Part shown: one piece after another, positions 13,285 to 39,729 of the stretch
Layout: the number at the start of each line of letters is the position of its first letter
Position numbering within the stretch: the stretch's first letter is position 1
Source: Octopus sinensis
Taxonomy: Eukaryota
Assembly: GCF_006345805.1 (NCBI RefSeq)
Contig: NC_042997.1
Coordinates: forward strand, 43,710,001 to 43,774,000
DNA: 64,000 nucleotides
Reading direction: 5' to 3'
The notes under the pieces: model-generated
The model's input: only the letters and a program-made list of their open reading frames with translations
What the model was told of the DNA's origin: nothing
Databases searched by the model: none
Made by a program: the position numbers and the translations under genes

Positions 13285-13480
13285 ACATCATCATTGTTTA
13301 ACGTCCGCTTTCCATGCTAGCATGGGTTGGACAGTTCGACCGGGGTCTGGGAAGCCAGGGCTGCACCAGGCTCCAGTCTGATCTGGCAGTGTTTCTACAG
13401 CTGGATGCCCTTCCTAACGCCAACCACTCCGCGAGTGTAGTGGGTGCTTTTTACGTGCCACCTGCACAGGTGCCAGGGGG
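13285..13480 (-). mobile_element. Family C, 5'-truncated
   Basis: catcatcattgtttaacgtccgctttccatgctagcatgg... is the reverse complement of the family C tail. Confidence 0.85.
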
Positions 13481-14154: not shown

Positions 14155-14543
14155 GTGGAGGCGCAATGGCCCAGTGGTTAGGGCAGCAGACTCGCGGTCA
14201 TAGGATCGCGGTTTCGATTCCCAGACCGGGCGTTGTGAGTGTTTATTGAGCGAAAACACCTAAAGCTCCACGAGGCTCTTGCAGGGGATGATGGTGATCC
14301 CTGCTGTACTCTTTCACCACAACTTTCTCTCACTCTTACTTCCTATTTCTGTTGTACCTGTATTTCAAAGGGCCGGCCTTGTCACTCTCTGTGTCACGCT
14401 GAATATCCCCGAGAACTACGTTAAGGGTGCACGTGTCTGTGGAGTGCTCAGTCACTTACACGTTAATTTCACGAGCAGGCTGTTCCGTTGATTTGGATCA
14501 ACCGGAACCCTCGTCGTCGTAACCGACGGAGTGCTTCCATCCC
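14155..14543 (+). mobile_element. SINE family B
   Basis: Full copy; 14-bp TSD atatgg(t/c)ttgattt at 14141 and 14544. Confidence 0.93.
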
Positions 14544-16242
14544 ATATGGCTTGATTTAGCTTCTGAAGAAATAACTATGTCAGTGAATTTGACTTGGAAT
14601 TGATATTGGTCCTGGGACTAAGTTCACTAAGAATTTACTATTACACCTTTGATTTTACTCCACCCAACATTATTGGGATGTATGTTTATTTCTGACAATG
14701 ACTGTTTCTATTTGTGCTGTACATATAAGCCTGTGTTTTCATTTATGATGTTTTGATACGTTAAAATACCTAAGTTACGCATTTGTATCAAGTCCTATAG
14801 CTTGCTTATATATTAATTTTTTATATTTATTACTTTAGGTGTAGTTAACTGGGTATGATTAAAATGGTTAGAGATCCTTCTTTTAGTGTATATTTTTGTC
14901 ACTTTAATCCACCACATGTGACTTTGTCCCCCATCTCTCTGGGACTGAAAAAATAAATACTTACTTGTATGAGACTTGATTCAATTAACTCTTTTTACCT
15001 GAAGAAATGCATGGCCTTGTGTCAATCTAAGTTTTATTATTCTATCTTACATTTCTCTCGGTGCCAATCCTATGATGTCTAGAGCTGGTGTCAGCAACAA
15101 GAAATCTAACGGTCTATCACTGAGTGCATGATTGATCAGATAAATGCCACAACAAAGTTTGGAATATATAAATTATCAATTTGAATACATTTTAATTACA
15201 GTTTTCATCAAACCAATAATTGATACATGTTGGAAAATCCTGTTTCTTTACCAAAGGATGCCAATTATTAATCAAAGAACTTGAGTTAAATCTATTTTAA
15301 TTAGGACATAACTAAAATCTATTAAAAAGCAGTAAAGAATATTTAAAACTTCAAAAATGAACCTAATACTCTGAATAGTGGTTAATTAAATATCATGAAA
15401 AACAAAATTGCTTAATTTTAACGCAAAGAGTCCATAAATCAGTGTGAAACCTGATATTGTTAGCTGCATGAAAGCCCTTCGGTATTGGCTGCCAGGCTTG
15501 TTGATACTAATACATTATCCAAAGGAACATCAGTCAATTTTGTTTTCAGATGATTCTTGATAGGTTTCATTTTTAAAATAATTACTGAGACAAGATAAAT
15601 GTATGATCTCATTTTTTTTTTCTCATGGATATTTCCCTCTTGGAGGAACATATTTTCCACAGAAGTCAAACATTGCTACTTTGATAGCCTAGTATTGCAA
15701 AACATGTCAAGAAATTGCATGACATACTTATCGGTACATAAACTGTTCCTTTTGTGTTCTATTTAACTACCAAATTACTCTACAGTGAGCATAGAAAAGA
15801 GATGATTAGTCCTAAATATTCCTTGCAAATCATTTACACATATTCTGTGGTGAAGCACAAAAGATTTGATAAAATATCTGCCTTCCTAGAATGGATTATA
15901 TTTTCTTTTTCAAGTAGATATGTAGCATGCCTTTCTTGTTAAATTGCATTAATGTTTCTGTTTACAAATTTGAATGATTTCACTTGAAATGTGTGCATGA
16001 AGAAAATATCTTGTTCATATTAACAAATGGTTCTACTTCTTGAGATTTGGTTTGGAACAAAATAGGACCCTTGACCAGTGTAACAAGCTGTTCATGTTCA
16101 TGATTCATCACTGAAGTTGTAGGAAATATTTAGAATAAGGAAAAATTGTTCACAGGTTGAAGAAGCAGTTTGTCTTTTAGTGGTGGATCTCGAGTCTCCC
16201 TTGCTTTTACCATGGAATCTTGTATACCATTGTAAAATATAT

Positions 16243-16495
16243 TCTGTGCCGGTGGCACGTAAAAAGCACCATCCGATCATGGCCATTTGCCAGCCTCGCC
16301 TGGCACCTGTGCAGGTGGCACGTAAAAAGCACCCACTGCACTCTCGGAGTGGTTGGTGTTAGGAAGGGCATCCAGCTGTAGAAACACTGCCAGATCAGAC
16401 TGGGCCTGGCGCAGCCTCCTGGCTTCCCAGACCCCAGTTGAACTGTCCAACCCATGCTAGCATGGAAAACGGACGTTAAACGATGATGATGACGA
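16243..16495 (+). mobile_element. Family C, 5'-truncated
   Basis: Two internal repeat units plus core and (GAT)n tail. Confidence 0.85.
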
Positions 16496-16749
16496 TCAAG
16501 CAAGTCTCTATGAGGTTGCACACAGGATATAGTGGTGGTCTAACATATTTTAAGTTAAATCATTTGAATGTATGTGCTTGTGAAAGAAAGTAAAAACAGA
16601 TGAGGTTCTTGCTTAGCTCAAATCAACCCGGATTGAATAGATCTGGGATCTAAGGCATTTCACAATCAATGTGTTCTTTTTCAAAGACACAAAGATGTGA
16701 TGTGAAATAATTTAGTTGAAATTTCCAGTTGGTTGAATGACCCATATTG

Positions 16750-16835
16750 AGATGGCTATTATACTTTACATCTCTAAAAATCCTTATATAGTTATTTCCC
16801 TTACAAACCCGAGCAATGCCAGGCGATACTGCTAG
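16750..16835 (+). mobile_element. Probable Helitron 3' terminus
   Basis: cccgagcaatgccaggcgatactgCTAG|T resembles the GC hairpin plus CTAG end of Helitrons, with the hairpin eroded by CpG-type changes. Confidence 0.5.
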
Positions 16836-17642
16836 TAACATATAATTGAGATATCTTCCTCAGGATATCTTCCTCGGTAGCACTGTCCCATATAGGACAC
16901 CACACTTTGTTGGCAATTATATGTTATGATTGCATATTGCTACTGTTTACATCTCGCTCAGAGATTTAATATGGCTTATAAATATATATAAGGTATTTGT
17001 GTGTGCCTTTTGAGAGTGGGTTTGTTCTTCTCAAGTCTCAAGTCTGTTTGCTGGTCTCTAAACAGTGTCATCATAAATGGTATCATTTGTTTCCAGTGCT
17101 CCATTAAGGTTTGTCTGGATCATTTGTTTGATCAACTGGAAGCTTGTTATCTCCTGTCAAAACAGGAGTTGACCTCAGGAAGGACATTCAATTATAAAAA
17201 AAAAAAAAAAAACTCTGCCCCAACATAGAGATAGGATCCTTTAGACCCTGTTGAGCCGTCTAGCCTGTGCCAGTATGGAGAACAGTTGTAAAATAACGAT
17301 TACATTGATCTTGTAAAGGAGGTCAACTTTTTAATTCTTTCAATCTTATAGACTGACACTCACCTCTCAAAATTGCTGGCTTTATGCCTAAATCAGAAAC
17401 AATTATTTTTAGCATAATTATTGTATTTGTTCTTTTCTTTTCCACTGTCTGTAAGTAATTTTTATTAATTCTAGATAGATATTTGTGCATTCTCAATACT
17501 TAAAGCCACTCCTCACGCTGGGAATGACCTACAACACTACTTTATATATCATATGAGCTTTCCTTGATGGAAAGCTTTCCGTATGTTTTATAGGTTGATG
17601 ACTGTTTGGAGTTTTTGTGGGAACTTTTTAGTTCTGGTTTAA

Positions 17643-17860
17643 CCCTTTAGTGTTCAGATTACTCTGTTAAATGTCATACTTTTCCACTCAAATTGTTTTG
17701 AATTAATCCTGGATCATCTTACAGCTTTGAGGTTTCAATGATGTGATTACTTATTTTTAGAATGGCATGTAGGTAGGTGTGGAGGCTAGATATGGCCAGT
17801 TTGAATATAAAATATGTAGAATATATTGGGCCAGATTTGGCCAGTTTAAACACTAAAGGG
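17643..17860 (+). mobile_element. piggyBac-type MITE
   Basis: TTAA|CCCTTTAGTGTT...AACACTAAAGGG|TTGA; same family at 40251, 46877 and 62991. Confidence 0.8.
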
Positions 17861-17910
17861 TTGAAATAACTGTAAGTCAAAGGATTTTGTTTTGTGTGTT
17901 ACTTGGTGAC

Positions 17911-20900
17911 CCTGGTGCCATATAAAAAACATCCACACTGTAAAGTGGTTGGCATTAGGAAGGGCAAAACAAACCTTGTCAGTGCTGGTGCCATGTAAAA
18001 TGCACTCAATTCCCTCTGTAAGGTGGTTGGCATTAGGAAGGGCAAAACAAACCTTGTCAGTGCTGGTGCCATGTAAAATGCACTCAATTCCCTCTGTAAG
18101 GTGGTTGGTATTAGGAAGGGCAAAACAAACCTTGTCAGTGCTGGTGCCATGTAAAATGCACTCAATTCCCTCTGTAAAGTGGTTGGCATTAGGAAGGGCA
18201 AAACAAACCTTGTCAGTGCTGGTGCCATGTAAAATGCACTCAATTCCCTCTGTAAGGTGGTTGGTATTAGGAAGGGCAAAACAAACCTTGTCAGTGCTGG
18301 TGCCATGTAAAATGCACTCAATTCCCTCTGTAAGGTGGTTGGCATTAGGAAGGGCAAAACAAACCTTGTCAGTGCTGGTGCCATGTAAAATGCACTCAAT
18401 TCCCTCTGTAAGGTGGTTGGTATTAGGAAGGGCAAAACAAACCTTGTCAGTGCTGGTGCCATGTAAAATGCACTCAATTCCCTCTGTAAAGTGGTTGGTA
18501 TTAGGAAGGGCAAAACAAACCTTGTCAGTGCTGGTGCCATGTAAAATGCACTCAATTCCCTCTGTAAGGTGGTTGGTATTAGGAAGGGCAAAACAAACCT
18601 TGTCAGTGCTGGTGCCATGTAAAATGCACTCAATTCCCTCTGTAAGGTGGTGGTATTACGAAGGGCAAAACAAACCTTGTCAGTGCTGGTGCCATGTAAA
18701 ATGCACTCAATTCCCTCTGTAAGGTGGTTGGTATTAGGAAGGGCAAAACAAACCTTGTCAGTGCTGGTGCCATGTAAAATGCACTCAATTCCCTCTGTAA
18801 GGTGGTTGGTATTAGGAAGGGCAAAACAAACCTTGTCAGTGCTGGTGCCATGTAAAATGCACTCAATTCCCTCTGTAAGGTGGTTGGCATTAGGAAGGGC
18901 AAAACAAACCTTGTCAGTGCTGGTGCCATGTAAAATGCACTCAATTCCCTCTGTAAGGTGGTTGGTATTAGGAAGGGCAAAACAAACCTTGTCAGTGCTG
19001 GTGCCATGTAAAATGCACTCAATTCCCTCTGTAAGGTGGTTGGTATTACGAAGGGCAAAACAAACCTTGTCAGTGTGCTGGTGCCATGTAAAATGCACTC
19101 AATTCCCTCTGTAAGGTGGTTGGTATTAGGAAGGGCAAAACAAACCTTGTCAGTGCTGGTGCCATGTAAAATGCACTCAATTCCCTCTGTAAGGTGGTTG
19201 GTATTAGGAAGGGCAAAACAAACCTTGTCAGTGCTGGTGCCATGTAAAATGCACTCAATTCCCTCTGTAAGGTGGTGGTGGCATTAGGAAGGGCAAAACA
19301 AACCTTGTCAGTGCTGGTGCCATGTAAAATGCACTCAATTCCCTCTGTAAGGTGGTTGGTATTTGGAAGGGCAAAACAAACCTTGTCAGTGCTGGTGCCA
19401 TGTAAAATGCACTCNNNNNNNNNNNNNNNNNNNNNNNNNNNNNNNNNNNNNNNNNNNNNNNNNNNNNNNNNNNNNNNNNNNNNNNNNNNNNNNNNNNNNN
19501 NNNNNNNNNNNNNNTCAATTCCCTCTGTAAGGTGGTTGGTATTAGGAAGGGCAAAACAAACCTTGTCAGTGCTGGTGCCATGTAAATGCACTCAATTCCC
19601 TCTGTAAGGTGGTTGGTATTGGATAAGGGCAAAACAAACCTTGTCAGTGCTGGTGCCATGTAAAATGCACTCAATCCCTCTGTAAGGTGGTTGGCATTTG
19701 GAAGGGCAAAACAAAACTTTGTCAGTGCTGGTGCCATGTAAAATGCACTCAATTCCTCTGTAAGGTGGTTGGTATTAGGAAGGGCAAAACAAACTTGTCA
19801 GTGCTGGTGCCATGTAAAATGCACTCAATTCCCTCTGTAAGGTGGGTTGGTATTAGGAAGGGCAAAACAAACCTTGTCAGTGCTGGTGCCATGTAAAATG
19901 CACTCAATTCCCTCTGTAAGGTGGTTGGTATTAGGAAGGGCAAAACAAACCTGTCAGTGTCTGGTGCCATGTAAAATGCACTCAATTCCCTCTGTAAGGT
20001 GGGTTGAGTATTAGGAAGGGCAAAACAAAACCTTGTCAGTGCTGGTGCCATGTAAATGCACTCAATTCCCTCTGTAAGGTGGTTGGTATTAGGAAGGGCA
20101 AAACAAACCTTGTCAGTGCTGGTGCCATGTAAAATGCACTCAATTCCCTCTGTAAGGTGGTTGGTATTAGGAAGGGCAAAACAAACCTTGTCAGTGCTGG
20201 TGCCATGTAAAATGCACTCAATTCCTCTGTAAGGTGGTTGGTATTAGGAAGGGCAAAACAAACCTTGTCAGTGCCTGGTGCCATGTAAAATGCACTCAAT
20301 TCCTCTGTAAGGTGGTTGGTATTAGGAAGGGCAAAACAAACCTTGTCAGTGCTGGTGCCATGTAAAATGCACTCAATTCCCTCTGTAAGGTGTTGGATTA
20401 GGAAGGGCAAAACAAACCTTGTCAGTGCTGGTGCCATGTAAAATGCACTCAATTCCCTCTGTAAGGTGGTTGGTATTAGGAAGGGCAAAACAAACCTTGT
20501 CAGTGCTGGTGCCATGTAAAATGCACTCAATTCCCTCTGTAAGGTGGTTGGTATTAGGAAGGGCAAAACAAACTTGTCAGTGCTGGTGCCATGTAAAATG
20601 CACTCAATTCCCTCTGTAAGGTGGTGGTATTAGGAAGGGCAAAACAAACCTTGTCAGTGCTGGTGCCATGTAAAATGCACTCAATTCCTCTGTAAGGTGG
20701 TTGGTATTTAGAAGGGCAAAACAAACCTTGTCAGTGCTGGTGCCATGTAAAATGCACTCAATTCCCTCTGTAAAGTGTGGTTGGTATTAGGAAGGGCAAA
20801 ACAAACCTTGTCAGTGCTTGGTGGCCATGTAAAATGCACTCAATTCCCTCTGTAAGGTGGTGTGGTATTAGGAAGGGCAAAACAAACCTTGTCAGTGCTG

Positions 20901-23900
20901 GTGCCATGTAAAATGCACTCAATTCCCTCTGTAAGGTGGTTGGTATTAGGAAGGGCAAAACAAACCTTGTCAGTGCTGGTGCCATGTAAAATGCACTCAA
21001 TTCCCTCTGTAAGGTGGTTGGTATTAGGAAGGGCAAAAACAAACCTGTCAGTGCTGGTGCCATGTAAAATGCACTCAATTCCCTCTGTAAGGTGGTTGGT
21101 ATTAGGAAGGGCAAAACAAACCTTGTCAGTGTGGTGGTGCCATGTAAAATGCACTCAATTCCCTCTGTAAGGTGGTTGTATTAGGAAGGGCAAAAACAAA
21201 ACCTTGTTGTCAGTGCTGGTGCCATGTAAAATGCACTCAATTCCCTCTGTAAGGTGGTTGGTATTAGGAAGGGCAAAACAAACCTTGTCAGTGCTGGTGC
21301 CATGTAAAATGCACTCAATTCCCTCTGTAAGGTGGTTGGTATTAGGAGAAGCGGCAAAACAAACCTTGTCAGTGCTGGTGCCATGTAAAATGCACTCAAT
21401 TCCCTCTGTAAGTGGTTGGTGGCATTAGGAAGGGCAAAACAAACCTTGTCAGTGCTGGTGCCATGTAAAATGCACTCAATTCCTCTGTAAGGTGGTTGGT
21501 ATTAGGAAGGGCAAAAACAAACCTTGTCAGTGCTGGTGCATGTAAAATGCACTCAATTCCCTCTGTAAGGTGGTTGGTATTAGGAAGGGCAAAACAAACC
21601 TTGTCAGTGCTGGTGCCATGTAAATGCACTCAATTCCCTCTGTAAGGTGGTTGGTATTAGGAAGGGCAAAACAAACCTTGTCAGTGCTGGTGCCATGTAA
21701 AATGCACTCAATTCCCTCTGTAAGGTGGTTGGTATTAGGAAGGGCAAAACAAACCTTGTCAGTGCTGGTGCCATGTAAAATGCACTCAATTCCCTCTGTA
21801 AGGTGGTTGGTATTAGGAAGGGCAAAACAAACCTTGTCAGTGCTGTGGTGCCATGTAAAATGCACTCAATTCCCTCTGTAAGGTGGTTGGTATTAGGAAG
21901 GGCCAAAACAAACCTTGTCAGTGCTGGTGCCATGTAAAATGCACTCAATTCCCTCTGTAAGGTGGTTGGTATTAGGAAGGGCAAAACAAACCTTGTCAGT
22001 GCTGGTGCCATGTAAAATGCACTCAATTCCTCTGTAAGGTGGTTGGTATTAGGAAGGGCAAAACAAACCTTGTCAGTGCTGGTGCCATGTAAAATGCACT
22101 CAATTCCCTCTGTAAGGTGGTTGGTATTAGGAAGGGCAAAACAAACCTTGTCAGTGCTGGTGGTGCCATGTAAAATGCACTCAATTCCCTCTGTAAGGGG
22201 GTTGGTGTTGGTTAGGTATTGGGAAGGGCAAAACAAACCTTGTCAGTGCTGGTGCCATGTAAAATGCACTCAATTCCCTCTGTAAGGTGGTTGGTATTAG
22301 GAAGGGCAAAACAAACCTTGTCAGTGCTGGTGCCATGTAAAATGCACTCAATTCCCTCTGTAAGGTGGTTGGTATTAGGAAGGGCAAAACAAACCTTGTC
22401 AGTGCTGGTGCCATGTAAAATGCACTCAATTCCCTCTGTAAGGTGGTTGGTATTAGGAAGGGCAAAACAAACCTTGTCAGTGCTGGTGCCATGTAAAATG
22501 CACTCAATTCCCTCTGTAAGGTGGTGGTATTAGGAAGGGCAAAACAAACCTTGTCAGTGCTGGTGCCATGTAAAATGCACTCAATTCCCTCTGTAAGGTG
22601 GTGGTATTAGGAAGGGCAAAACAAACCTTGTCAGTGCTGGTGCCATGTAAAATGCACTCAATTCCCTCTGTAAGGTGGTTGGTATTAGGAAGGGCAAACA
22701 AACCTTGTCAGTGCTGGTGCCATGTAAAATGCACTCAATTCCCTCTGTAAGGTGGTTGGTATTAGGAAGGGCAAAACAAACCTTGTCAGTGCTGGTGCCA
22801 TGTAAAATGCACTCAATTCCCTCTGTAAGGTGGTTGGTATTAGGAAGGGCAAAACAAACCTTGTCAGTGCTGGTGCCATGTAAAATGCACTCAATTCCCT
22901 CTGTAAGGTGGTTGGTATTAGGAAGGGCAAACAAACCTTGTCAGTGCTGGTGCCATGTAAAATGCACTCAATTCCCTCTGTAAGGTGGTTGGTATTAGGA
23001 AGGGCCAAAACAAACCTTGTCAGTGCTGGTGCCATGTAAAATGCACTCAATTCCCTCTGTAAGGTGGTTGGTATTAGGAAGGGCAAAACAAACCTTGTCA
23101 GTGCTGGTGCCATGTAAAATGCACTCAATTCCCTCTGTAAGGGTTGGTATTAGGACAACCACAAGGGCAAAACAAACCTTGTCAGTGCTGGGCCATGTAA
23201 AATGCACTCAATTCCCTCTGTAAGGTGGTTGGTATTAGGAAGGGCAAAACAAACCTTGTCAGTGCTGGTGCCATGTAAAATGCACTCAATTCCCTCTGTA
23301 AGGTGGTTGGTATTAGGAAGGGCAAAACAAACCTTGTCAGTGCTGGTGCCATGTAAAATGCACTCAATTCCCTCTGTAAGGTGGTTGGATTAGGAAGGGC
23401 AAAACAAACCTTGTCAGTGCTGGTGCCATGTAAAATGCACTCAATTCCCTCTGTAAGGTGGTTGGTATTAGGAAGGGCAAAACAAACCTTGTCAGTGCTG
23501 GTGCCATGTAAAATGCACTCAATTCCCTCTGTAAGGTGGTTGGTATTAGGAAGGGCAAAACAAACCTTGTCAGTGCTGGTGCCATGTAAAATGCACTCAA
23601 TTCCCTCTGTAAGGTGGTTGGTATTAGGAAGGGCAAAACAAACCTTGTCAGTGCTGGTGCCATGTAAAATGCACTCAATTCCCTCTGTAAGGTGGTTGGT
23701 ATTAGGAAGGGCAAAACAAACCTTGTCAGTGCTGGTGCCATGTAAAATGCACTCAATTCCCTCTGTAAGGTGGTTGGTATTAGGAAGGGCAAAACAAACC
23801 TTGTCAGTGCTGGTGCCATGTAAAATGCACTCAATTCCCTCTGTAAGGTGGTTGGTATTAGGAAGGGCAAAACAAACCTTGTCAGTGCTGGTGCCATGTA

Positions 23901-26900
23901 AAATGCACTCAATTCCCTCTGTAAGGTGGTTGGTATTAGGAAGGGCAAAACAAACCTTGTCAGTGCTGGTGCCATGTAAAATGCACTCAATTCCCTCTGT
24001 AAGGTGGTTGGTATTAGGAAGGGCAAAACAAACCTTGTCAGTGCTGGTGCCATGTAAAATGCACTCAATTCCCTCTGTAAGGTGGTTGGTATTAGGAAGG
24101 GCAAAACAAACCTTGTCAGTGCTGGTGCCATGTAAAATGCACTCAATTCCCTCTGTAAGGTGGTTGGTATTAGGAAGGGCAAAACAAACCTTGTCAGTGC
24201 TGGTGCCATGTAAAATGCACTCAATTCCCTCTGTAAGGTGGTTGGTATTAGGAAGGGCAAAACAAACCTTGTCAGTGCTGGTGCCATGTAAAATGCACTC
24301 AATTCCCTCTGTAAGGTGGTTGGTATTAGGAAGGGCAAAACAAACCTTGTCAGTGCTGGTGCCATGTAAAATGCACTCAATTCCCTCTGTAAGGTGGTTG
24401 GTATTAGGAAGGGCAAAACAAACCTTGTCAGTGCTGGTGCCATGTAAAATGCACTCAATTCCCTCTGTAAGGTGGTTGGTATTAGGAAGGGCAAAACAAA
24501 CCTTGTCAGTGCTGGTGCCATGTAAAATGCACTCAATTCCCTCTGTAAGGTGGTTGGTATTAGGAAGGGCAAAACAAACCTTGTCAGTGCTGGTGCCATG
24601 TAAAATGCACTCAATTCCCTCTGTAAGGTGGTTGGTATTAGGAAGGGCAAAACAAACCTTGTCAGTGCTGGTGCCATGTAAAATGCACTCAATTCCCTCT
24701 GTAAGGTGGTTGGTATTAGGAAGGGCAAAACAAACCTTGTCAGTGCTGGTGCCATGTAAAATGCACTCAATTCCCTCTGTAAGGTGGTTGGTATTAGGAA
24801 GGGCAAAACAAACCTTGTCAGTGCTGGTGCCATGTAAAATGCACTCAATTCCCTCTGTAAGGTGGTTGGTATTAGGAAGGGCAAAACAAACCTTGTCAGT
24901 GCTGGTGCCATGTAAAATGCACTCAATTCCCTCTGTAAGGTGGTTGGTATTAGGAAGGGCAAAACAAACCTTGTCAGTGCTGGTGCCATGTAAAATGCAC
25001 TCAATTCCCTCTGTAAGGTGGTTGGTATTAGGAAGGGCAAAACAAACCTTGTCAGTGCTGGTGCCATGTAAAATGCACTCAATTCCCTCTGTAAGGTGGT
25101 TGGTATTAGGAAGGGCAAAACAAACCTTGTCAGTGCTGGTGCCATGTAAAATGCACTCAATTCCCTCTGTAAGGTGGTTGGTATTAGGAAGGGCAAAACA
25201 AACCTTGTCAGTGCTGGTGCCATGTAAAATGCACTCAATTCCCTCTGTAAGGTGGTTGGTATTAGGAAGGGCAAAACAAACCTTGTCAGTGCTGGTGCCA
25301 TGTAAAATGCACTCAATTCCCTCTGTAAGGTGGTTGGTATTAGGAAGGGCAAAACAAACCTTGTCAGTGCTGGTGCCATGTAAAATGCACTCAATTCCCT
25401 CTGTAAGGTGGTTGGTATTAGGAAGGGCAAAAAACCTTGTCAGTGCTGGTGCCATGTAAAATGCACTCAATTCCCTCTGTAAGGTGGTTGGTATTAGGAA
25501 GGGCAAAACAAACCTTGTCAGTGCTGGTGCCATGTAAAATGCACTCAATTCCCTCTGTAAGGTGGTTGGTATTAGGAAGGGCAAAACAAACCTTGTCAGT
25601 GCTGGTGCCATGTAAAATGCACTCAATTCCCTCTGTAAGGTGGTTGGTATTAGGAAGGGCAAAACAAACCTTGTCAGTGCTGGTGCCATGTAAAATGCAC
25701 TCAATTCCCTCTGTAAGGTGGTTGGTATTAGGAAGGGCAAAACAAACCTTGTCAGTGCTGGTGCCATGTAAAATGCACTCAATTCCCTCTGTAAGGTGGT
25801 TGGTATTAGGAAGGGCAAAACAAACCTTGTCAGTGCTGGTGCCATGTAAAATGCACTCAATTCCCTCTGTAAGGTGGTTGGTATTAGGAAGGGCAAAACA
25901 AACCTTGTCAGTGCTGGTGCCATGTAAAATGCACTCAATTCCCTCTGTAAGGTGGTTGGTATTAGGAAGGGCAAAACAAACCTTGTCAGTGCTGGTGCCA
26001 TGTAAAATGCACTCAATTCCCTCTGTAAGGTGGTTGGTATTAGGAAGGGCAAAACAAACCTTGTCAGTGCTGGTGCCATGTAAAATGCACTCAATTCCCT
26101 CTGTAAGGTGGTTGGTATTAGGAAGGGCAAAACAAACCTTGTCAGTGCTGGTGCCATGTAAAATGCACTCAATTCCCTCTGTAAGGTGGTTGGTATTAGG
26201 AAGGGCAAAACAAACCTTGTCAGTGCTGGTGCCATGTAAAATGCACTCAATTCCCTCTGTAAGGTGGTTGGTATTAGGAAGGGCAAAACAAACCTTGTCA
26301 GTGCTGGTGCCATGTAAAATGCACTCAATTCCCTCTGTAAGGTGGTTGGTATTAGGAAGGGCAAAACAAACCTTGTCAGTGCTGGTGCCATGTAAAATGC
26401 ACTCAATTCCCTCTGTAAGGTGGTTGGTATTAGGAAGGGCAAAACAAACCTTGTCAGTGCTGGTGCCATGTAAAATGCACTCAATTCCCTCTGTAAGGTG
26501 GTTGGTATTAGGAAGGGCAAAACAAACCTTGTCAGTGCTGGTGCCATGTAAAATGCACTCAATTCCCTCTGTAAGGTGGTTGGTATTAGGAAGGGCAAAA
26601 CAAACCTTGTCAGTGCTGGTGCCATGTAAAATGCACTCAATTCCCTCTGTAAGGTGGTTGGTATTAGGAAGGGCAAAACAAACCTTGTCAGTGCTGGTGC
26701 CATGTAAAATGCACTCAATTCCCTCTGTAAGGTGGTTGGTATTAGGAAGGGCAAAACAAACCTTGTCAGTGCTGGTGCCATGTAAAATGCACTCAATTCC
26801 CTCTGTAAGGTGGTTGGTATTAGGAAGGGCAAAACAAACCTTGTCAGTGCTGGTGCCATGTAAAATGCACTCAATTCCCTCTGTAAGGTGGTTGGTATTA

Positions 26901-29900
26901 GGAAGGGCAAAACAAACCTTGTCAGTGCTGGTGCCATGTAAAATGCACTCAATTCCCTCTGTAAGGTGGTTGGTATTAGGAAGGGCAAAACAAACCTTGT
27001 CAGTGCTGGTGCCATGTAAAATGCACTCAATTCCCTCTGTAAGGTGGTTGGTATTAGGAAGGGCAAAACAAACCTTGTCAGTGCTGGTGCCATGTAAAAT
27101 GCACTCAATTCCCTCTGTAAGGTGGTTGGTATTAGGAAGGGCAAAACAAACCTTGTCAGTGCTGGTGCCATGTAAAATGCACTCAATTCCCTCTGTAAGG
27201 TGGTTGGTATTAGGAAGGGCAAAACAAACCTTGTCAGTGCTGGTGCCATGTAAAATGCACTCAATTCCCTCTGTAAGGTGGTTGGTATTAGGAAGGGCAA
27301 AACAAACCTTGTCAGTGCTGGTGCCATGTAAAATGCACTCAATTCCCTCTGTAAGGTGGTTGGTATTAGGAAGGGCAAAACAAACCTTGTCAGTGCTGGT
27401 GCCATGTAAAATGCACTCAATTCCCTCTGTAAGGTGGTTGGTATTAGGAAGGGCAAAACAAACCTTGTCAGTGCTGGTGCCATGTAAAATGCACTCAATT
27501 CCCTCTGTAAGGTGGTTGGTATTAGGAAGGGCAAAACAAACCTTGTCAGTGCTGGTGCCATGTAAAATGCACTCAATTCCCTCTGTAAGGTGGTTGGTAT
27601 TAGGAAGGGCAAAACAAACCTTGTCAGTGCTGGTGCCATGTAAAATGCACTCAATTCCCTCTGTAAGGTGGTTGGTATTAGGAAGGGCAAAACAAACCTT
27701 GTCAGTGCTGGTGCCATGTAAAATGCACTCAATTCCCTCTGTAAGGTGGTTGGTATTAGGAAGGGCAAAACAAACCTTGTCAGTGCTGGTGCCATGTAAA
27801 ATGCACTCAATTCCCTCTGTAAGGTGGTTGGTATTAGGAAGGGCAAAACAAACCTTGTCAGTGCTGGTGCCATGTAAAATGCACTCAATTCCCTCTGTAA
27901 GGTGGTTGGTATTAGGAAGGGCAAAACAAACCTTGTCAGTGCTGGTGCCATGTAAAATGCACTCAATTCCCTCTGTAAGGTGGTTGGTATTAGGAAGGGC
28001 AAAACAAACCTTGTCAGTGCTGGTGCCATGTAAAATGCACTCAATTCCCTCTGTAAGGTGGTTGGTATTAGGAAGGGCAAAACAAACCTTGTCAGTGCTG
28101 GTGCCATGTAAAATGCACTCAATTCCCTCTGTAAGGTGGTTGGTATTAGGAAGGGCAAAACAAACCTTGTCAGTGCTGGTGCCATGTAAAATGCACTCAA
28201 TTCCCTCTGTAAGGTGGTTGGTATTAGGAAGGGCAAAACAAACCTTGTCAGTGCTGGTGCCATGTAAAATGCACTCAATTCCCTCTGTAAGGTGGTTGGT
28301 ATTAGGAAGGGCAAAACAAACCTTGTCAGTGCTGGTGCCATGTAAAATGCACTCAATTCCCTCTGTAAGGTGGTTGGTATTTGGAAGGGCAAAACAAACC
28401 TTGTCAGTGCTGGTGCCATGTAAAATGCACTCAATTCCCTCTGTAAGGTGGTTGGTATTAGGAAGGGCAAAACAAACCTTGTCAGTGCTGGTGCCATGTA
28501 AAATGCACTCAATTCCCTCTGTAAGGTGGTTGGTATTAGGAAGGGCAAAACAAACCTTGTCAGTGCTGGTGCCATGTAAAATGCACTCAATTCCCTCTGT
28601 AAGGTGGTTGGTATTAGGAAGGGCAAAACAAACCTTGTCAGTGCTGGTGCCATGTAAAATGCACTCAATTCCCTCTGTAAGGTGGTTGGTATTAGGAAGG
28701 GCAAAACAAACCTTGTCAGTGCTGGTGCCATGTAAAATGCACTCAATTCCCTCTGTAAGGTGGTTGGTATTAGGAAGGGCAAAACAAACCTTGTCAGTGC
28801 TGGTGCCATGTAAAATGCACTCAATTCCCTCTGTAAGGTGGTTGGTATTAGGAAGGGCAAAACAAACCTTGTCAGTGCTGGTGCCATGTAAAATGCACTC
28901 AATTCCCTCTGTAAGGTGGTTGGTATTAGGAAGGGCAAAACAAACCTTGTCAGTGCTGGTGCCATGTAAAATGCACTCAATTCCCTCTGTAAGGTGGTTG
29001 GTATTAGGAAGGGCAAAACAAACCTTGTCAGTGCTGGTGCCATGTAAAATGCACTCAATTCCCTCTGTAAGGTGGTTGGTATTAGGAAGGGCAAAACAAA
29101 CCTTGTCAGTGCTGGTGCCATGTAAAATGCACTCAATTCCCTCTGTAAGGTGGTTGGTATTAGGAAGGGCAAAACAAACCTTGTCAGTGCTGGTGCCATG
29201 TAAAATGCACTCAATTCCCTCTGTAAGGTGGTTGGTATTAGGAAGGGCAAAACAAACCTTGTCAGTGCTGGTGCCATGTAAAATGCACTCAATTCCCTCT
29301 GTAAGGTGGTTGGTATTAGGAAGGGCAAAACAAACCTTGTCAGTGCTGGTGCCATGTAAAATGCACTCAATTCCCTCTGTAAGGTGGTTGGTATTAGGAA
29401 GGGCAAAACAAACCTTGTCAGTGCTGGTGCCATGTAAAATGCACTCAATTCCCTCTGTAAGGTGGTTGGTATTAGGAAGGGCAAAACAAACCTTGTCAGT
29501 GCTGGTGCCATGTAAAATGCACTCAATTCCCTCTGTAAGGTGGTTGGTATTAGGAAGGGCAAAACAAACCTTGTCAGTGCTGGTGCCATGTAAAATGCAC
29601 TCAATTCCCTCTGTAAGGTGGTTGGTATTTGGAAGGGCAAAACAAACCTTGTCAGTGCTGGTGCCATGTAAAATGCACTCAATTCCCTCTGTAAGGTGGT
29701 TGGTATTAGGAAGGGCAAAACAAACCTTGTCAGTGCTGGTGCCATGTAAAATGCACTCAATTCCCTCTGTAAGGTGGTTGGTATTAGGAAGGGCAAAACA
29801 AACCTTGTCAGTGCTGGTGCCATGTAAAATGCACTCAATTCCCTCTGTAAGGTGGTTGGTATTAGGAAGGGCAAAACAAACCTTGTCAGTGCTGGTGCCA

Positions 29901-32445
29901 TGTAAAATGCACTCAATTCCCTCTGTAAGGTGGTTGGTATTAGGAAGGGCAAAACAAACCTTGTCAGTGCTGGTGCCATGTAAAATGCACTCAATTCCCT
30001 CTGTAAGGTGGTTGGTATTAGGAAGGGCAAAACAAACCTTGTCAGTGCTGGTGCCATGTAAAATGCACTCAATTCCCTCTGTAAGGTGGTTGGTATTAGG
30101 AAGGGCAAAACAAACCTTGTCAGTGCTGGTGCCATGTAAAATGCACTCAATTCCCTCTGTAAGGTGGTTGGTATTAGGAAGGGCAAAACAAACCTTGTCA
30201 GTGCTGGTGCCATGTAAAATGCACTCAATTCCCTCTGTAAGGTGGTTGGTATTAGGAAGGGCAAAACAAACCTTGTCAGTGCTGGTGCCATGTAAAATGC
30301 ACTCAATTCCCTCTGTAAGGTGGTTGGTATTAGGAAGGGCAAAACAAACCTTGTCAGTGCTGGTGCCATGTAAAATGCACTCAATTCCCTCTGTAAGGTG
30401 GTTGGTATTAGGAAGGGCAAAACAAACCTTGTCAGTGCTGGTGCCATGTAAAATGCACTCAATTCCCTCTGTAAGGTGGTTGGTATTAGGAAGGGCAAAA
30501 CAAACCTTGTCAGTGCTGGTGCCATGTAAAATGCACTCAATTCCCTCTGTAAGGTGGTTGGTATTAGGAAGGGCAAAACAAACCTTGTCAGTGCTGGTGC
30601 CATGTAAAATGCACTCAATTCCCTCTGTAAGGTGGTTGGTATTAGGAAGGGCAAAACAAACCTTGTCAGTGCTGGTGCCATGTAAAATGCACTCAATTCC
30701 CTCTGTAAGGTGGTTGGTATTTGGAAGGGCAAAACAAACCTTGTCAGTGCTGGTGCCATGTAAAATGCACTCAATTCCCTCTGTAAGGTGGTTGGTATTA
30801 GGAAGGGCAAAACAAACCTTGTCAGTGCTGGTGCCATGTAAAATGCACTCAATTCCCTCTGTAAGGTGGTTGGTATTAGGAAGGGCAAAACAAACCTTGT
30901 CAGTGCTGGTGCCATGTAAAATGCACTCAATTCCCTCTGTAAGGTGGTTGGTATTAGGAAGGGCAAAACAAACCTTGTCAGTGCTGGTGCCATGTAAAAT
31001 GCACTCAATTCCCTCTGTAAGGTGGTTGGCATTAGGAAGGGCAAAACAAACCTTGTCAGTGCTGGTGCCATGTAAAATGCACTCAATTCCCTCTGTAAGG
31101 TGGTTGGTATTAGGAAGGGCAAAACAAACCTTGTCAGTGCTGGTGCCATGTAAAATGCACTCAATTCCCTCTGTAAGGTGGTTGGTATTAGGAAGGGCAA
31201 AACAAACCTTGTCAGTGCTGGTGCCATGTAAAATGCACTCAATTCCCTCTGTAAGGTGGTTGGCATTAGGAAGGGCAAAACAAACCTTGTCAGTGCTGGT
31301 GCCATGTAAAATGCACTCAATTCCCTCTGTAAGGTGGTTGGTATTAGGAAGGGCAAAACAAACCTTGTCAGTGCTGGTGCCATGTAAAATGCACTCAATT
31401 CCCTCTGTAAGGTGGTTGGTATTAGGAAGGGCAAAACAAACCTTGTCAGTGCTGGTGCCATGTAAAATGCACTCAATTCCCTCTGTAAGGTGGTTGGTAT
31501 TAGGAAGGGCAAAACAAACCTTGTCAGTGCTGGTGCCATGTAAAATGCACTCAATTCCCTCTGTAAGGTGGTTGGTATTAGGAAGGGCAAAACAAACCTT
31601 GTCAGTGCTGGTGCCATGTAAAATGCACTCAATTCCCTCTGTAAGGTGGTTGGTATTAGGAAGGGCAAAACAAACCTTGTCAGTGCTGGTGCCATGTAAA
31701 ATGCACTCAATTCCCTCTGTAAGGTGGTTGGTATTAGGAAGGGCAAAACAAACCTTGTCAGTGCTGGTGCCATGTAAAATGCACTCAATTCCCTCTGTAA
31801 GGTGGTTGGTATTAGGAAGGGCAAAACAAACCTTGTCAGTGCTGGTGCCATGTAAAATGCACTCAATTCCCTCTGTAAGGTGGTTGGCATTAGGAAGGGC
31901 AAAACAAACCTTGTCAGTGCTGGTGCCATGTAAAATGCACTCAATTCCCTCTGTAAGGTGGTTGGTATTAGGAAGGGCAAAACAAACCTTGTCAGTGCTG
32001 GTGCCATGTAAAATGCACTCAATTCCCTCTGTAAGGTGGTTGGTATTAGGAAGGGCAAAACAAACCTTGTCAGTGCTGGTGCCATGTAAAATGCACTCAA
32101 TTCCCTCTGTAAGGTGGTTGGTATTAGGAAGGGCAAAACAAACCTTGTCAGTGCTGGTGCCATGTAAAATGCACTCAATTCCCTCTGTAAGGTGGTTGGT
32201 ATTAGGAAGGGCAAAACAAACCTTGTCAGTGCTGGTGCCATGTAAAATGCACTCAATTCCCTCTGTAAGGTGGTTGGTATTAGGAAGGGCAAAACAAACC
32301 TTGTCAGTGCTGGTGCCATGTAAAATGCACTCAATTCCCTCTGTAAGGTGGTTGGTATTAGGAAGGGCAAAACAAACCTTGTCAGTGCTGGTGCCATGTA
32401 AAATGCACTCAATTCCCTCTGTAAGGTGGTTGGTATTAGGAAGGG
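17911..32445 (+). repeat. 78-bp tandem satellite, about 185 units as assembled, inside arginase intron 1
   Basis: Unit gtgctggtgccatgtaaaatgcactcaattccctctgtaaggtggttggtattaggaagggcaaaacaaaccttgtca; 26-aa periodicity in the ORF track; contains a 100-N gap. Confidence 0.98.
19415..19514. other. Assembly gap (100 N)
   Basis: Run of exactly 100 N. Confidence 1.
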
Positions 32446-32563
32446 AATCCAGCCGTAAAATCCGTGCCAAAACAGACAGTTAAGCCTGCTGCAGGTTCTT
32501 TGCAAGCCAGTTTCTGTCAAACCATTTAACTCATGCTAGCATGGGAAATGGACATTGAATGAT
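32446..32563 (+). mobile_element. 3' half of the family C-like element that hosts the satellite
   Basis: aagggaatccagccgtaaaa...catgctagcatgggaaatggacattgaatgatg continues the family C core directly after the last unit. Confidence 0.8.
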
Positions 32564-32954
32564 GGCATAGGAGTGGCTGTGTGGTCAATAGCTTGCTTAC
32601 AAACCATATGGTTCCGGGTTCAGTCCCACTGTGTGGCACCTTGGGCAAGTGTCTTCTATTATAGCCTCGGGTCGACCAAAGCCTTGTGAGTGGATTTGGC
32701 AGACGGAAACTGAAAGAAGCCCTTCGTATATATGTATATGTATATGTGTATGTTTGTGTGTCTGTCTTTGTACCCCCAACGTCGCTTGACAACTGATACA
32801 GGTGTGTTTACATCCCCGTAACTTAGCAGTTCAGTAAAAGGGACCGATAGAATAAGTACCAGGCTTACAAAGAATAAGTCCTGGGGTTGATTTGCTTGAG
32901 TAAAGGCGGTGCTCCAACATGGCCACAGTCACGTGACTGAAACAAGTAAAAGAG
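32564..32954 (+). mobile_element. SINE family A
   Basis: Full copy abutting the satellite host tail. Confidence 0.88.
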
Positions 32955-33433
32955 ATCCCATGTATAGATGTGATGCAGGCATGACTGTGTGGTAATAAGA
33001 TTGCTCCCTGATCACATGATCTCAGGTTCAGTCCCATAGTGTGGCATCTTAGGCAAGTGTCTTTTACCTTAGGCCTTAGGTCTACCAAGTCTTGTGAGAG
33101 GATTTGGTAAACAGAGCCTTAAAGAAGCCCGATGTGTGCGTGTGTGTGTGTGTGTTTCTATCTCCTTGCTTTGACCTCACGTGATATGTGTAGACAAGTG
33201 CCACTCTTGTGCAAATGGTGTGCTTCATTAGCAGTCTTTTGTGAAAGCATATCTGACCCTGGGGAAATATTACTTTGCTTGGAAACAGGCAACGGGTTGG
33301 CACCAGGGTCAGCATCTAGCCCAGAAAATTTGCCTCAACACATTCCGTCTGACCCATGTGAGCATGGAAAACTGGATGGTAGATGATGTTGACAATGATG
33401 ATGTTCTTTTGTATATAGCGATGTTGGGGGTAC

Positions 33434-33836
33434 ATAGGTGCAGGAGTGGCTGTGTGGTAAGTAGCTTGTTTACCAACCACATGGTTCCGGGTTCAGTCCC
33501 ACTGCGTGGCACCTTGGGCAAGTGTCTTCTACTATAGCCTCAGGCCGACCAAAGCCTTGTGAGTGGATTTGGTAGACGGAAACTGAAAGAAGCCCGTCGT
33601 ATATATGTATATGCGTGTGTGTGTTTGTGTGTCTGTGTTTGTCCCCCTAGCATTGCTTGACAACCGATGCTGGTGTGTTTATGTCCCCGTCACTTAGCGG
33701 TTCGGCAAAAGAGACCGATAGAATAAGTACTGGGCTTACAAAAGAATAAGTCCCGGGGTCGAGTTGCTCGATTAAAGGCGGTGCTCCAGCATGGCTGCAG
33801 TCAAATGACTGAAACAAGTAAAAGAGTAAAAGAGAG
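33434..33836 (+). mobile_element. SINE family A
   Basis: Full copy with few mismatches to the other copies. Confidence 0.9.
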
Positions 33837-34243
33837 CCCACTGACACATTGTCCAACCGTTATTGGGCCGTTGGACATTCTGCTGTGATATGCCCAATTG
33901 TTTCAACATTCTGAGCATATTACAGAGTTTTTTGTTTACTGCTGGTCTTGAAAGATTTTGCTAATATGTGTGGCTTGTGGTAAGAATTACATTTCATATT
34001 GCTACTTGAATTTTTTGTGCAACCATATTTTTTTTATTTTTTTACAACCATATTTCTAATTCTTGTTAGTCAAAAGATTTAGGCATGGGCATGGCTGTGT
34101 GGTAGGAAGATTTCTTCTCAACCACATGGTTTTGGATTCAGTCCCATTGCATAGCACCTTGGGCAAGTGACTTCTACGATAGGTCTGGGTTGAATAAAGC
34201 CCTATCAGTGGATTTGGTAGATGGAAACAGAAAGGAGCTTGCC

Positions 34244-34298
<55 letters not shown>

Positions 34299-35087
34299 CA
34301 CTCTGTTTTGAACTTGGCCCACTGAAAGGAACTTATAACCTTATGATCATGAGCTGAATACCTTAGCCACTAAGTCACAATATATACATTGTGTGTCTTT
34401 GTGTTTGTCTCCATCACTGCTTGACAACTGGTGTTAGTTTGTTTACATCCTAGTAACTTAGCAGATCAGCAAAAGAGACCAATAGAATAAGTAGCAGGAT
34501 TAGGAAAAAATAAGTACTGAGATCAATTTGTTCAACAAAAATGCCTCAAAGCAATGTTGTAGTATGGCCAAAGTCTTCTGAATGAAACAATTACAATTAG
34601 TAAAGGAAGTAAATACATAAAAAAAATTAATTAGCAGAACATAGAATTGTCTGTCAGTGACTTGATGGAGAAGATGAGTGACTGAATATTCTTCATTTTG
34701 CACTTTGGTGAACTTGGTAGATATGATTAGTGTAATTTGGATGAAAATATCTTATGTTGAGGTGTTTACATTTGTTGAATGTTCAAACAGAAATGAAGAT
34801 TATTTATATCTTTGTAGGTAGGGCAAGGAGTATTTTTTTTTCAGAGTGTGAGAATGCAGATTTAGCTCAGCATATTGAAATATCAAAAGGAATTTTTCAT
34901 TTGCATCAGTTGTGTTCCTCTTTCATGTTTAGTGTTGTACACCTCAGCTGACATGTGCTTGGGATGACATTCTACAGATGGTGAGCAATTTTACGGTTGC
35001 ATTATACATTCCAATGAATTCACTCGTCAAACTGTTAATTATAGTGTCAGCTAATTGTAGGAAATAACTACAAACTATAATTATTAA

Positions 35088-35310
35088 CCCTTTCGTTACC
35101 AACCTGGCTGAAACTGGCTCTGGCTCTGTAGTACAAATGTTTTGTTTTCATAAGTTCTGAATTAAAATCTTCCACCAAACCTTAGTCACAATTTATGCTC
35201 CTAACACTAGCTTAATGATAACATAAGTTATTTTACTAAATTCTTTGTTATATTTAAAAGTAATTGAAAGAAACAGAGAGCATCTCAAAATAAATACAGT
35301 AATGAAAGGG
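35088..35310. mobile_element. piggyBac-type MITE, second family
   Basis: TTAA|CCCTTTCGTTAC...GTAATGAAAGGG|TTAA. Confidence 0.8.
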
Positions 35311-37280: not shown

Positions 37281-37281
37281 C

Positions 37282-37327
<46 letters not shown>

Positions 37328-39692: not shown

Positions 39693-39729
<37 letters not shown>

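What the first reader, a model, noticed from the sequence alone, without database searches (positions are those of the whole stretch)
17911..32563. 14.5-kb satellite born from the inside of a single retroelement, in the arginase first intron
The left flank (cctggtgccatataaaaaacatccacactgtaaagtggttggcattaggaagggc) and right flank (aagggaatccagccgtaaaa...catgctagcatgg...gatg) join into one family C-like element. About 61 of the 78 bp in the unit align to its core. The rest, caaaacaaac, resembles ccaaaacagac just downstream, as if a ~21-nt deletion at a GC microhomology created the unit. The units are almost identical, which implies very recent amplification. The array makes up a third of the intron and must be transcribed with the gene. 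This looks like a TE-to-satellite transition caught in situ, probably length-polymorphic and possibly affecting arginase expression.
Basis: partly seen in the sequence, partly recalled or inferred. Interest (0 to 1): 0.75.

Follow-up and report, generated by a model that had tools for sequence, protein, structure and literature searches.

The report
SINE-derived tandem array in arginase intron
A 78-base piece of an old octopus SINE-like repeat is copied head-to-tail about 185 times in the first coding intron of the Octopus vulgaris arginase-2 gene; this kind of transposon-to-satellite conversion is already known in other animals, and the array's true length is uncertain because an assembly gap lies inside it.

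Summary
A 78-bp tandem array runs from 17938 to 32445: 184 full units plus a 27-base partial unit. It lies in the sense orientation in coding intron 1 (962-43956) of Octopus vulgaris arginase-2 and fills 34% of that intron. The two flanks (17912-17964 and 32446-32564) join, in register and without a gap, into one roughly 170-bp SINE-like element that has about 10 other copies in the window.

- The host element is old (JC 0.30 from the family consensus, CpG-decayed). Its left head differs from the in-array heads by 7 substitutions and 7 gap columns, so the first duplication is probably old. Only the homogenisation looks recent.
- The origin proposed for "caaaacaaac" is not significant (p about 0.07-0.09).
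- The parent family itself carries 1-3.4 head repeats of 59-68 bp, so this is an extreme case of a family-wide tendency.
- Length and near-perfect identity are not secure. The N gap sits inside the array and the phase is off by 2 bases. A 4-kb zone beside it has raw long-read-type indels, and the remaining units may be homogenised by polishing.
- Whether the unit is unique to this locus could not be tested.

TE-derived satellites are well documented, so this is a new member of a known kind, of modest interest.

The parts
17912..17937 (+). H': the unamplified 5' head of the host SINE-like element (CTGGTGCCATATAAAAAACATCCACA).
   Evidence: It matches the unit head only over its first 16 nt (score 28 against a null of 12.7 +/- 2.4, 0 of 300 shuffles). 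After that it carries a 5-nt deletion and substitutions. It shares the derived states GGTGCCAT and CTGTAA with the unit against the family consensus.
17938..19414 (+). Array, left segment: 18 full units plus 70 bases. Carries substitution variants.
   Evidence: 9 of 18 units equal the consensus. The variants G7A and T16C reproduce the states of the left flank and the family. 0.68% substitutions per site.
19415..19514 (.). Assembly gap (100 N) inside the array.
   Evidence: The left side ends at unit position 70 and the right side starts at position 69, so the phase is off by 2 bases and the size is unknown.
19515..23460 (+). Array, low-quality zone: 51 units.
   Evidence: 84 indel columns against 7 substitutions; 22 singleton variants. 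This is the signature of a poorly polished long-read contig end. The assembly method is described in PMC10700109.
23461..32445 (+). Array, high-identity zone: 114 units plus the final 27-base partial unit (32419-32445).
   Evidence: 107 of 114 units are identical to the consensus; 6 substitutions in 8,814 sites. Ancestral C16 variants occur only at units 166, 169 and 177, near the right edge.
32446..32564 (+). 3' part of the host element (AATCCAGCC...CATGCTAGCATGG...GAATGATG), with a short GATG tail.
   Evidence: It continues the last partial unit without a gap, in register with the family consensus GGAAGGG|CATCCAGC.
728..961 (+). Arginase-2 coding exon 1 (MSFHF...IGVVGVPLNKGQ | gtaagt).
   Evidence: 100% identical to P0001, 'arginase-2, mitochondrial [Octopus vulgaris]', PF00491.
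962..43956 (+). Coding intron 1 (42,995 bases), which holds the array.
   Evidence: GT..AG borders and exon phases fit.
43957..44029 (+). Arginase-2 exon 2 (DKQGVELGPKALRDNGLITSLEDL, 73 nt, ends in phase 1).
49363..49469 (+). Arginase-2 exon 3 (HRINDYGNIEF...SHASKK).
7222..7392 (+). Example of a young copy of the parent family. It is preceded by 3.4 head repeats of 61-63 bp at 7025-7239.
   Evidence: TRF; identity 0.947 to the family consensus; candidate 11-nt target-site duplication.

Best explanation
This is a locus-bound tandem array (a large minisatellite or young satellite) that grew in place from the 5' part of one old, CpG-decayed copy of a dispersed SINE-like element lying in sense orientation in coding intron 1 of O. 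vulgaris arginase-2.

Proposed steps:
1. Shown: the element inserted long ago (JC about 0.3 from the family consensus).
2. Inferred: a segment made of the head, the 'GGTGGTTGG.ATTAGGAAGGG' body and a 20-nt joint was duplicated in tandem. This happened by replication slippage or unequal exchange, possibly between the imperfect direct repeat CCTGGTGCC (17911) and CCTGCTGCA (32485). The same head region is duplicated 1-3.4 times in ordinary copies of the family.
3. Inferred: much later, unequal crossing-over or gene conversion expanded and homogenised a derived variant (T16) through the centre, leaving ancestral variants (C16, A7) at both edges.

The array is most likely neutral intronic DNA that is transcribed with the pre-mRNA and spliced out. 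Its exact length and degree of identity are not established by this assembly.
For: - The array and its period are real.
- The flanks join gaplessly and in register into one family member.
- The unit's 59-66 nt are homologous to the family core.
- H' and the in-array head share derived states against all other copies (GGTGCCAT; CTGTAA), so they are each other's closest relatives.
- All 10 ancestral C16 variants lie in the outer 22 units on the left and 19 on the right (hypergeometric probability 1.2e-7).
- No copy of the unit junction exists elsewhere in the 64-kb window despite about 10 family copies.
- Family copies carry their own 59-68-bp head repeats.
- The host element has JC 0.30 and 2 of 8 CpGs; the unit has 0 CpG.
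- Gene continuity (exon 1 left of the gap, exons 2-3 right of it, one annotated protein) and element continuity both support the scaffold join across the gap.
- The mechanism and the architecture (array bounded by SINE termini; slippage between short direct repeats) are documented elsewhere (PMC10702118; PMC6947457).
Against: - The rest of the octopus genome could not be searched, so uniqueness to this locus is unproven.
- H' differs strongly from the in-array head. That pattern would also fit a unit imported from another copy.
- The last partial unit carries the derived T16 state rather than the ancestral C16.
- The origin of the 20-nt joint is unresolved: all three models are non-significant.
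- The pattern of edge variants around a uniform centre could partly be a polishing artefact, because reads anchor well only near unique flanks.
- No contig spans the array.
Confidence: 0.62

Rival explanations
1. The 78-bp repeat is a multi-locus, TE-borne satellite. In this reading an old subfamily of the element already carried (head-body-joint)n internal repeats, or a satellite exists elsewhere. This locus is then one of many arrays: it either expanded from a pre-existing internal repeat or was acquired by homologous recombination or gene conversion with the resident element.
For: - The family is built with variable head repeats.
- H' is far more diverged from the in-array head than neighbouring bases are.
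- In squamates, SINE-derived satellites occur at many loci with SINE termini at the array ends (PMC10702118).
- Homologous recombination would also preserve the register.
Against: - No junction copy occurs outside the array in the window although about 10 family copies are present.
- H' and H share derived states not seen in other copies.
- Ancestral variants sit at both edges.
- The stop-free repeat peptides have no match among 5.8 billion predicted proteins. This is weak evidence, because eukaryotic repeats are rarely gene-called.
Confidence: 0.22
2. Assembly artefact: only a few units exist, and the assembler or scaffolder inflated the array or joined unrelated contig ends.
For: - An N gap with a 2-base phase mismatch lies inside the array.
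- A 4-kb indel-rich zone lies to the right of the gap.
- 107 of 114 units are perfectly identical, as consensus polishing would produce.
- Coverage was 27.5x ONT R9.4.1, assembled with NextDenovo and polished with Hypo.
Against: - Long-read assemblers usually collapse tandem arrays rather than expand them.
- 12.9 kb of array is contiguous in one contig.
- The two contig ends complete both the same gene and the same element in register.
- Real substitution variants survive kilobases from the edges, at units 132, 148 and 162.
- A wrong length remains likely (I estimate about 0.5 that the true size differs by more than 10%), but that is not the same as the array being absent.
Confidence: 0.03
3. 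The array is a functional cis-element of arginase-2, for example a repeated binding-site or enhancer array, a small-RNA source, or a transcription or splicing brake.
For: - It lies in sense orientation in a first coding intron.
- It supplies about 185 copies of a GTAAGG donor-like motif.
- The annotated product of this gene is a truncated 141-aa protein.
Against: - No structure beyond chance: a DNA fold of a unit dimer gives z = +0.62.
- No Rfam family matches.
- The truncation arises at the exon-3 donor, 17 kb downstream of the array.
- The unit is decayed TE sequence, and there are no conservation data.
Confidence: 0.06

Closest known systems
SINE-derived satellites (sSats) of squamate reptiles (Vassetzky et al. 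2023, PMC10702118)
   Same: Both are tandem arrays whose unit is an internal part of a SINE. The terminal units run on into the SINE's own ends. Longer arrays are more homogeneous. The proposed route is the same: duplication, then amplification, then concerted evolution.
   Different: Those are multi-locus and often subtelomeric, with up to about 1000 units. Arrays flanked by both SINE termini are a minor variant there. Here one intragenic locus is seen, genome-wide distribution is unknown, and the parent element has no demonstrable small-RNA head.
Minisatellites/VNTRs born inside Alu and B1 SINEs by slippage between short direct repeats (Haber-Louis model, reviewed in PMC6947457)
   Same: A single-locus array is seeded inside one SINE copy, with 5-10-bp direct repeats proposed to bracket the founding unit. 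Here CCTGGTGCC and CCTGCTGCA (7/9 identical) bracket about 93-98 nt of the joined element.
   Different: The unit here is longer (78 bp) and the array much larger (at least 14.5 kb). The direct repeat is imperfect, and the unit needs an extra deletion of about 20 nt. The link is not statistically established.
Mollusc TE-derived satellites: PcH-sat of the limpet Patella from a Nin-SINE (PMC11121367); MITE- or Helitron-borne satellites of bivalves (listed in PMC6947457)
   Same: Same phylum. In each case the satellite monomer contains a large segment of a SINE or MITE.
   Different: Those are abundant, pericentromeric or dispersed satellites (up to 10% of the genome) known from monomers. Here the founding element and both junctions are visible at one euchromatic, intronic locus.
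SVA-type composite retroposons with an internal VNTR
   Same: The parent family carries a variable number (1-3.4) of 59-68-bp internal head repeats that differ between copies.
   Different: The comparison rests on my own knowledge of SVA. There is no sequence relation, and the repeats here lie at the 5' head. The 185-unit expansion is a post-insertion event at one locus.

Membership tests
TE-derived (SINE-derived) satellite / tandem array | Head-to-tail array of a defined monomer | tested here: met
   78-bp period, 185 units, 97-98% matches.
TE-derived (SINE-derived) satellite / tandem array | Monomer homologous to an internal segment of a dispersed element | tested here: met
   59-66 of 78 nt align to the family core. 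Score 58.5 against a null of 16.2 +/- 3.0; BLAST E down to 2e-9 against other copies.
TE-derived (SINE-derived) satellite / tandem array | Terminal units continue into the element's own ends | tested here: met
   Both edges are in register. The joined flanks align gaplessly across the join to 9 copies.
Satellite DNA in the strict sense | High genomic abundance, multiple long arrays, heterochromatic location | not testable with these tools
   No octopus genome or reads are in any searchable collection. There were 0 hits in metagenome contigs and the protein database, which is uninformative.
SINE | 5' head derived from tRNA, 5S or 7SL with a pol III promoter | tested here: not met
   ARAGORN found nothing, and Rfam found nothing at gathering threshold or at E <= 1, on a young full copy (6900-7450) and on the window. 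A- and B-box-like strings seen by eye are not a test.
SINE | Short, non-coding, dispersed in many copies, simple-repeat 3' tail | tested here: met
   About 10 copies in 64 kb, 170-460 bp, (GAT)n tails.
SINE | Target-site duplications | tested here: inconclusive
   1 of 9 copies has an 11-nt direct repeat exactly at the tail end (6932-6942 / 7401-7411). None was found for the others or for the host copy.
Minisatellite born by slippage between short direct repeats | 5-10-bp direct repeats bracketing the founding unit | tested here: inconclusive
   CCTGGTGCC (17911) and CCTGCTGCA (32485) are 7/9 identical. The unit is about 20 nt shorter than their spacing, and the joint alignment gives p about 0.07.
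Minisatellite/VNTR | Length polymorphism among individuals | not testable with these tools
   Only one assembly is available, and it has a gap inside the array.
Arginase (Pfam PF00491) gene, first intron | Flanking exons encode arginase and the array lies between exons 1 and 2 | tested here: met
   The exon 1-3 peptide is 100% identical to O. vulgaris arginase-2 (PF00491). Splice sites and phases fit. An upstream non-coding exon cannot be excluded, so the statement is 'first coding intron'.

The most novel reading that the evidence does not exclude
The head of this octopus SINE-like family is a built-in duplication-prone module that repeatedly seeds tandem arrays. On this reading, the arginase-2 locus is a single-locus, length-polymorphic young satellite with its founder element and both junctions still readable. 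That would make it a tractable natural system for timing each step of satellite birth across O. vulgaris, O. sinensis and O. bimaculoides. Array length might also modulate ARG2 transcription or processing.
Probability: 0.1. Interest if true: 0.5.

Novelty: new member of a known kind. Interest (0 to 1): 0.3.

Why it matters
It gives a clean cephalopod example of a tandem array with the founding transposon copy and both junctions preserved. The searched literature held no report of an octopus satellite. With the sister genomes it could date the separate steps of duplication, expansion and homogenisation.

In practical terms it flags three things in the O. vulgaris reference:
- an unresolved region, with a gap and unpolished sequence inside a gene;
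- spurious ORFs of up to 3112 aa across the array;
- a truncated arginase-2 gene model.

It does not change what is known about how satellites arise.

Tried and rejected
- Orthologous or other loci through the gene's protein: the only hit was the O. vulgaris product itself, and no encoding contig is on record.
- The satellite through its stop-free 26-aa repeat peptides in the 5.8-billion protein collection: none found.
- Exact junction 31-mer in metagenome contigs: 0 hits. The prokaryotic, viral, plasmid and E. coli collections were not scanned because they are irrelevant here.
- Full-text search for six diagnostic k-mers of the unit and both SINE families: 0 papers. No literature on octopus satellites was found.
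- tRNA or Rfam ancestry of the parent element: none.
- A further degenerate unit upstream of H': none (score 15 against a null of 16.4).
- Three models for the 20-nt joint were tested against shuffles:
  - homology to the family's 'pre-motif' CCTGGCACCAGTGC;
  - a collinear AAACC[A/T]TG[C/T]CA after a 7-11-nt deletion.
  All were non-significant (p = 0.09 to 0.8).
- Secondary structure as a driver of slippage: z = +0.62, rejected.
- Higher-order repeat: the TRF 234-bp row is only 3 x 78, and no periodic variant pattern was seen.


Full report
**What is there**

Tandem Repeats Finder reports a 78-bp period at 17938-19414 (18.9 copies, 97% matches) and 19515-32445 (165.5 copies, 98% matches). 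The two stretches are separated by the only N run of the window, 19415-19514. Anchoring on CCCTCTGTAA splits the stretch into 185 units, counting the gap-spanning unit and a last partial unit of 27 bases (32419-32445). Of the 183 complete units, 133 equal the consensus:

CTGTAAGGTGGTTGGTATTAGGAAGGGCAAAACAAACCTTGTCAGTGCTGGTGCCATGTAAAATGCACTCAATTCCCT.

A 31-mer that spans the unit-specific joint occurs 172 times with up to 3 mismatches. All hits are between 17958 and 32391, none is elsewhere in the window, and 0 are expected by chance. The array is real in this sequence.

**The gap, tested first**

Both sides of the gap are the same repeat in the same orientation. The left side stops at unit position 70 (...ATGCACTC) and the right side starts at position 69 (TCAATTCC...). 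The letters are therefore not continuous: removing the Ns would duplicate TC. The true gap is 76 modulo 78 bases, or else the contig ends overlap.

The array falls into three zones:

| Zone | Coordinates | Units | Variation |
|---|---|---|---|
| 1 | 17938-19414 | 18 | Mainly substitution variants, 0.68% per site |
| 2 | 19515-23460 | 51 | 84 indel columns against 7 substitutions; 22 singleton variants |
| 3 | 23461-32445 | 114 | 107 perfect units; 6 substitutions in 8,814 sites |

The exon peptides identify the source as Octopus vulgaris. The published chromosome-level assembly was built from 27.5x ONT R9.4.1 reads with NextDenovo. It was polished with Hypo using 10x Illumina and ONT reads, and scaffolded with Tigmint/ARKS/LINKS and YaHS (PMC10700109).

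I read zone 2 as a poorly polished contig end. I read the perfection of zone 3 as at least partly a consensus or polishing effect. Both readings are inference.

No contig spans the array, so 14.5 kb is not a measurement. The scaffold join itself is credible. Exon 1 lies left of the gap and exons 2-3 lie right of it, all in one annotated protein. The two flanks also complete one element in register.

**Gene context**

Three exons lie on the + strand:
- exon 1, 728-961 (MSFHF...IGVVGVPLNKGQ | gtaagt);
- exon 2, 43957-44029 (DKQGVELGPKALRDNGLITSLEDL; 73 nt);
- exon 3, 49363-49469 (HRINDYGNIEF...).

They have canonical splice sites and matching phases. The joined peptide is 100% identical over its full length to 'arginase-2, mitochondrial [Octopus vulgaris]', which carries Pfam PF00491. 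Coding intron 1 is 42,995 bases, and the array is 33.7% of it, in sense orientation. An upstream non-coding exon cannot be excluded.

**The flanks and the parent family**

Left flank plus the first 27 bases of unit 0, joined to the right flank, aligns across the join and without a gap to nine other places in the window. The hits run at 68-73% identity with E values of 1e-10 to 1e-24 (alignment A1). The host element is therefore 17912-17964 | 32446-32564.

Ordinary copies of the family have three parts:
- a variable number (1 to 3.4) of 59-68-bp head repeats, each beginning GGTGGCACGTAAAAAGCACC;
- a core of about 170 bp;
- a (GAT)n tail.

Seven copies are young: 94-98% identical to their consensus, JC 0.02-0.06, with 4-9 CpGs. 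The host element (75%, JC 0.30, 2 of 8 CpGs) and the copy at 7712-7884 (78%, 0 CpG) are old.

One copy has an 11-nt candidate target-site duplication exactly at its tail. No tRNA or other Rfam family is detectable. 'SINE-like retroposon' is thus an inference from tail, size, copy number and one target-site duplication. It is not a demonstrated membership.

**What the unit is made of**

Read in the element's phase, the unit has three parts:
- H, 31 nt: CTGGTGCCATGTAAAATGCACTCAATTCCCT;
- B, 27 nt: CTGTAAGGTGGTTGGTATTAGGAAGGG;
- X, 20 nt: CAAAACAAACCTTGTCAGTG.

H plus B plus the following C (59 nt) align to the family core at 81% identity, with a score of 58.5 against a null of 16.2 +/- 3.0.

The origin of X is not resolved:
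However, 22 of 300 shuffles score as well, and p = 0.087 in a second test.
- Homology of the 3' half of X to the family's 'pre-motif' CCTGGCACCAGTGC gives p of 0.24 or more.
- MAFFT's collinear placement after a 7-11-nt deletion gives p = 0.2-0.4.

An imperfect direct repeat, CCTGGTGCC (17911) and CCTGCTGCA (32485), brackets about 93-98 nt of the joined element. It would suit the slippage-between-short-repeats model for the birth of minisatellites in SINEs (PMC6947457). This remains a hypothesis.

**Age and mode**

The unamplified head H' (17912-17937) matches H only over its first 16 nt. After that it has a 5-nt deletion and several substitutions. Over H'B0 against HB there are 7 mismatches and 7 gap columns in 52 aligned sites, giving JC 0.15. 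The 47 bases immediately to its right (B0 and X0) differ from the array consensus at only 2 sites, both of them polymorphic within the array.

H and H' nevertheless share derived states against every other copy (GGTGCCAT; CTGTAA). They are therefore each other's closest relatives. No decayed unit lies further upstream. All ten units with the ancestral C16 state lie in the outer 22 units on the left or the outer 19 on the right (probability 1.2e-7). C16 is the state of the left flank and of the family.

Together this fits the following sequence:
- an old element;
- an old founding duplication;
- a much later spread of a derived variant through the centre.

I applied the calibration quoted in PMC13282606 (JC 0.09 is about 25 My and 0.2 is about 56 My). 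The resulting dates are rough inferences from few sites.
- Zone 3 (0.07%) would be on the order of 0.2 My.
- Zone 1 (0.7%) would be about 2 My.
- The H/H' split would be tens of My.
- The insertion would be older still.

They are subject to two caveats. Polishing can erase central variants, and array edges may decay faster. 'Very recent amplification' may hold for the bulk of the array. 'Birth caught in the act' does not.

**Function**

Nothing points to a function:
- A unit dimer folds no better than shuffles (z = +0.62).
- No RNA family matches.
- The unit is decayed TE sequence with no CpG, so CpG methylation has no target in the consensus unit.

Sense-strand transcription with the pre-mRNA follows from the array's position. 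An effect on expression is speculation. The truncated 141-aa annotated product arises from read-through of the exon-3 donor, 17 kb downstream of the array, and is not linked to it.

**Comparison with what is known**

Conversion of transposons into tandem arrays is well documented. Examples are:
- SINE-derived satellites in 56 squamate genomes, where terminal units run into the SINE termini and longer arrays are more homogeneous (PMC10702118);
- minisatellites derived from Alu and B1 elements, and many TE-derived satellites (PMC6947457);
- a limpet satellite that contains 118 bp of a Nin-SINE (PMC11121367).

The locus meets the architectural criteria of a TE-derived array. Whether it is a satellite in the strict sense (many loci, high abundance) could not be tested, because no octopus genome or read set is searchable here. 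I rate it a new member of a known kind. It is the first such case I could find for a cephalopod in the searched library, and it is of modest interest.

**Verdict**

My confidence estimates are:

| Reading | Confidence |
|---|---|
| In-place expansion from one old SINE-like copy (best explanation) | 0.62 |
| Multi-locus, TE-borne repeat (main rival) | 0.22 |
| Array is a pure assembly artefact | 0.03 |
| Stated length (14.5 kb) is off by more than 10% | about 0.5 |

Noticed in passing
window 49363-49481: The annotated O. vulgaris 'arginase-2, mitochondrial' protein (141 aa) equals exons 1-3 plus read-through of the exon-3 donor (AAG|gtaaatctttag gives VNL*). It is a truncated model or isoform. 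The catalytic exons (GGDHS region and onwards) are not in the window.
   Followed up: partly
window 17638-17865: A MITE-like element with 17-nt terminal inverted repeats (TTTAACCCTTTAGTGTT / AACACTAAAGGGTTGAA, 94% complementary) lies 46 nt to the left of the host element's head.
   Followed up: partly
window 32565-32740 and 16 other places (e.g. 33442-33613, 37693-37863, 8712-8882): A second and much more abundant SINE-like family has 17 copies in the window at 75-94% identity. One copy abuts the GATG tail of the array-bearing element. Neither ARAGORN nor Rfam finds a tRNA-like head in it.
   Followed up: partly
window 7025-7239, 9327-9517, 42361-42511, 43597-43716, 57287-57437: Young copies of the parent family carry 1.9-3.4 tandem head repeats of 59-68 bp. 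The head region is therefore duplication-prone across the whole family, not only at the arginase locus.
   Followed up: yes
window 23182-32520 (-), 25437-32483 (+), 25418-32470 (-): 78 is a multiple of 3 and the unit is stop-free in 3 of 6 frames. The array therefore yields spurious ORFs of up to 3112 aa, which a prokaryote-style gene caller would report. None is present in the protein collection.
   Followed up: yes
window 6932-6942 and 7401-7411: An 11-nt direct repeat, ATGTAAATAAA, flanks one family copy exactly at the end of its (GAT)n tail. This is a candidate target-site duplication. It would include about 75 nt of AT-rich sequence (6943-7015) as the element's true 5' end.
   Followed up: partly
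window 17938-32445: The consensus unit contains no CpG, whereas the family consensus has 8. All CpG sites of the amplified segment had decayed before amplification.
   Followed up: yes
window 32734-32816: There is a weak Rfam mir-297 match (23.7 bits against a gathering score of 90; E = 0.089) on a (TG/TA)-rich microsatellite. It is almost certainly a chance match.
   Followed up: no
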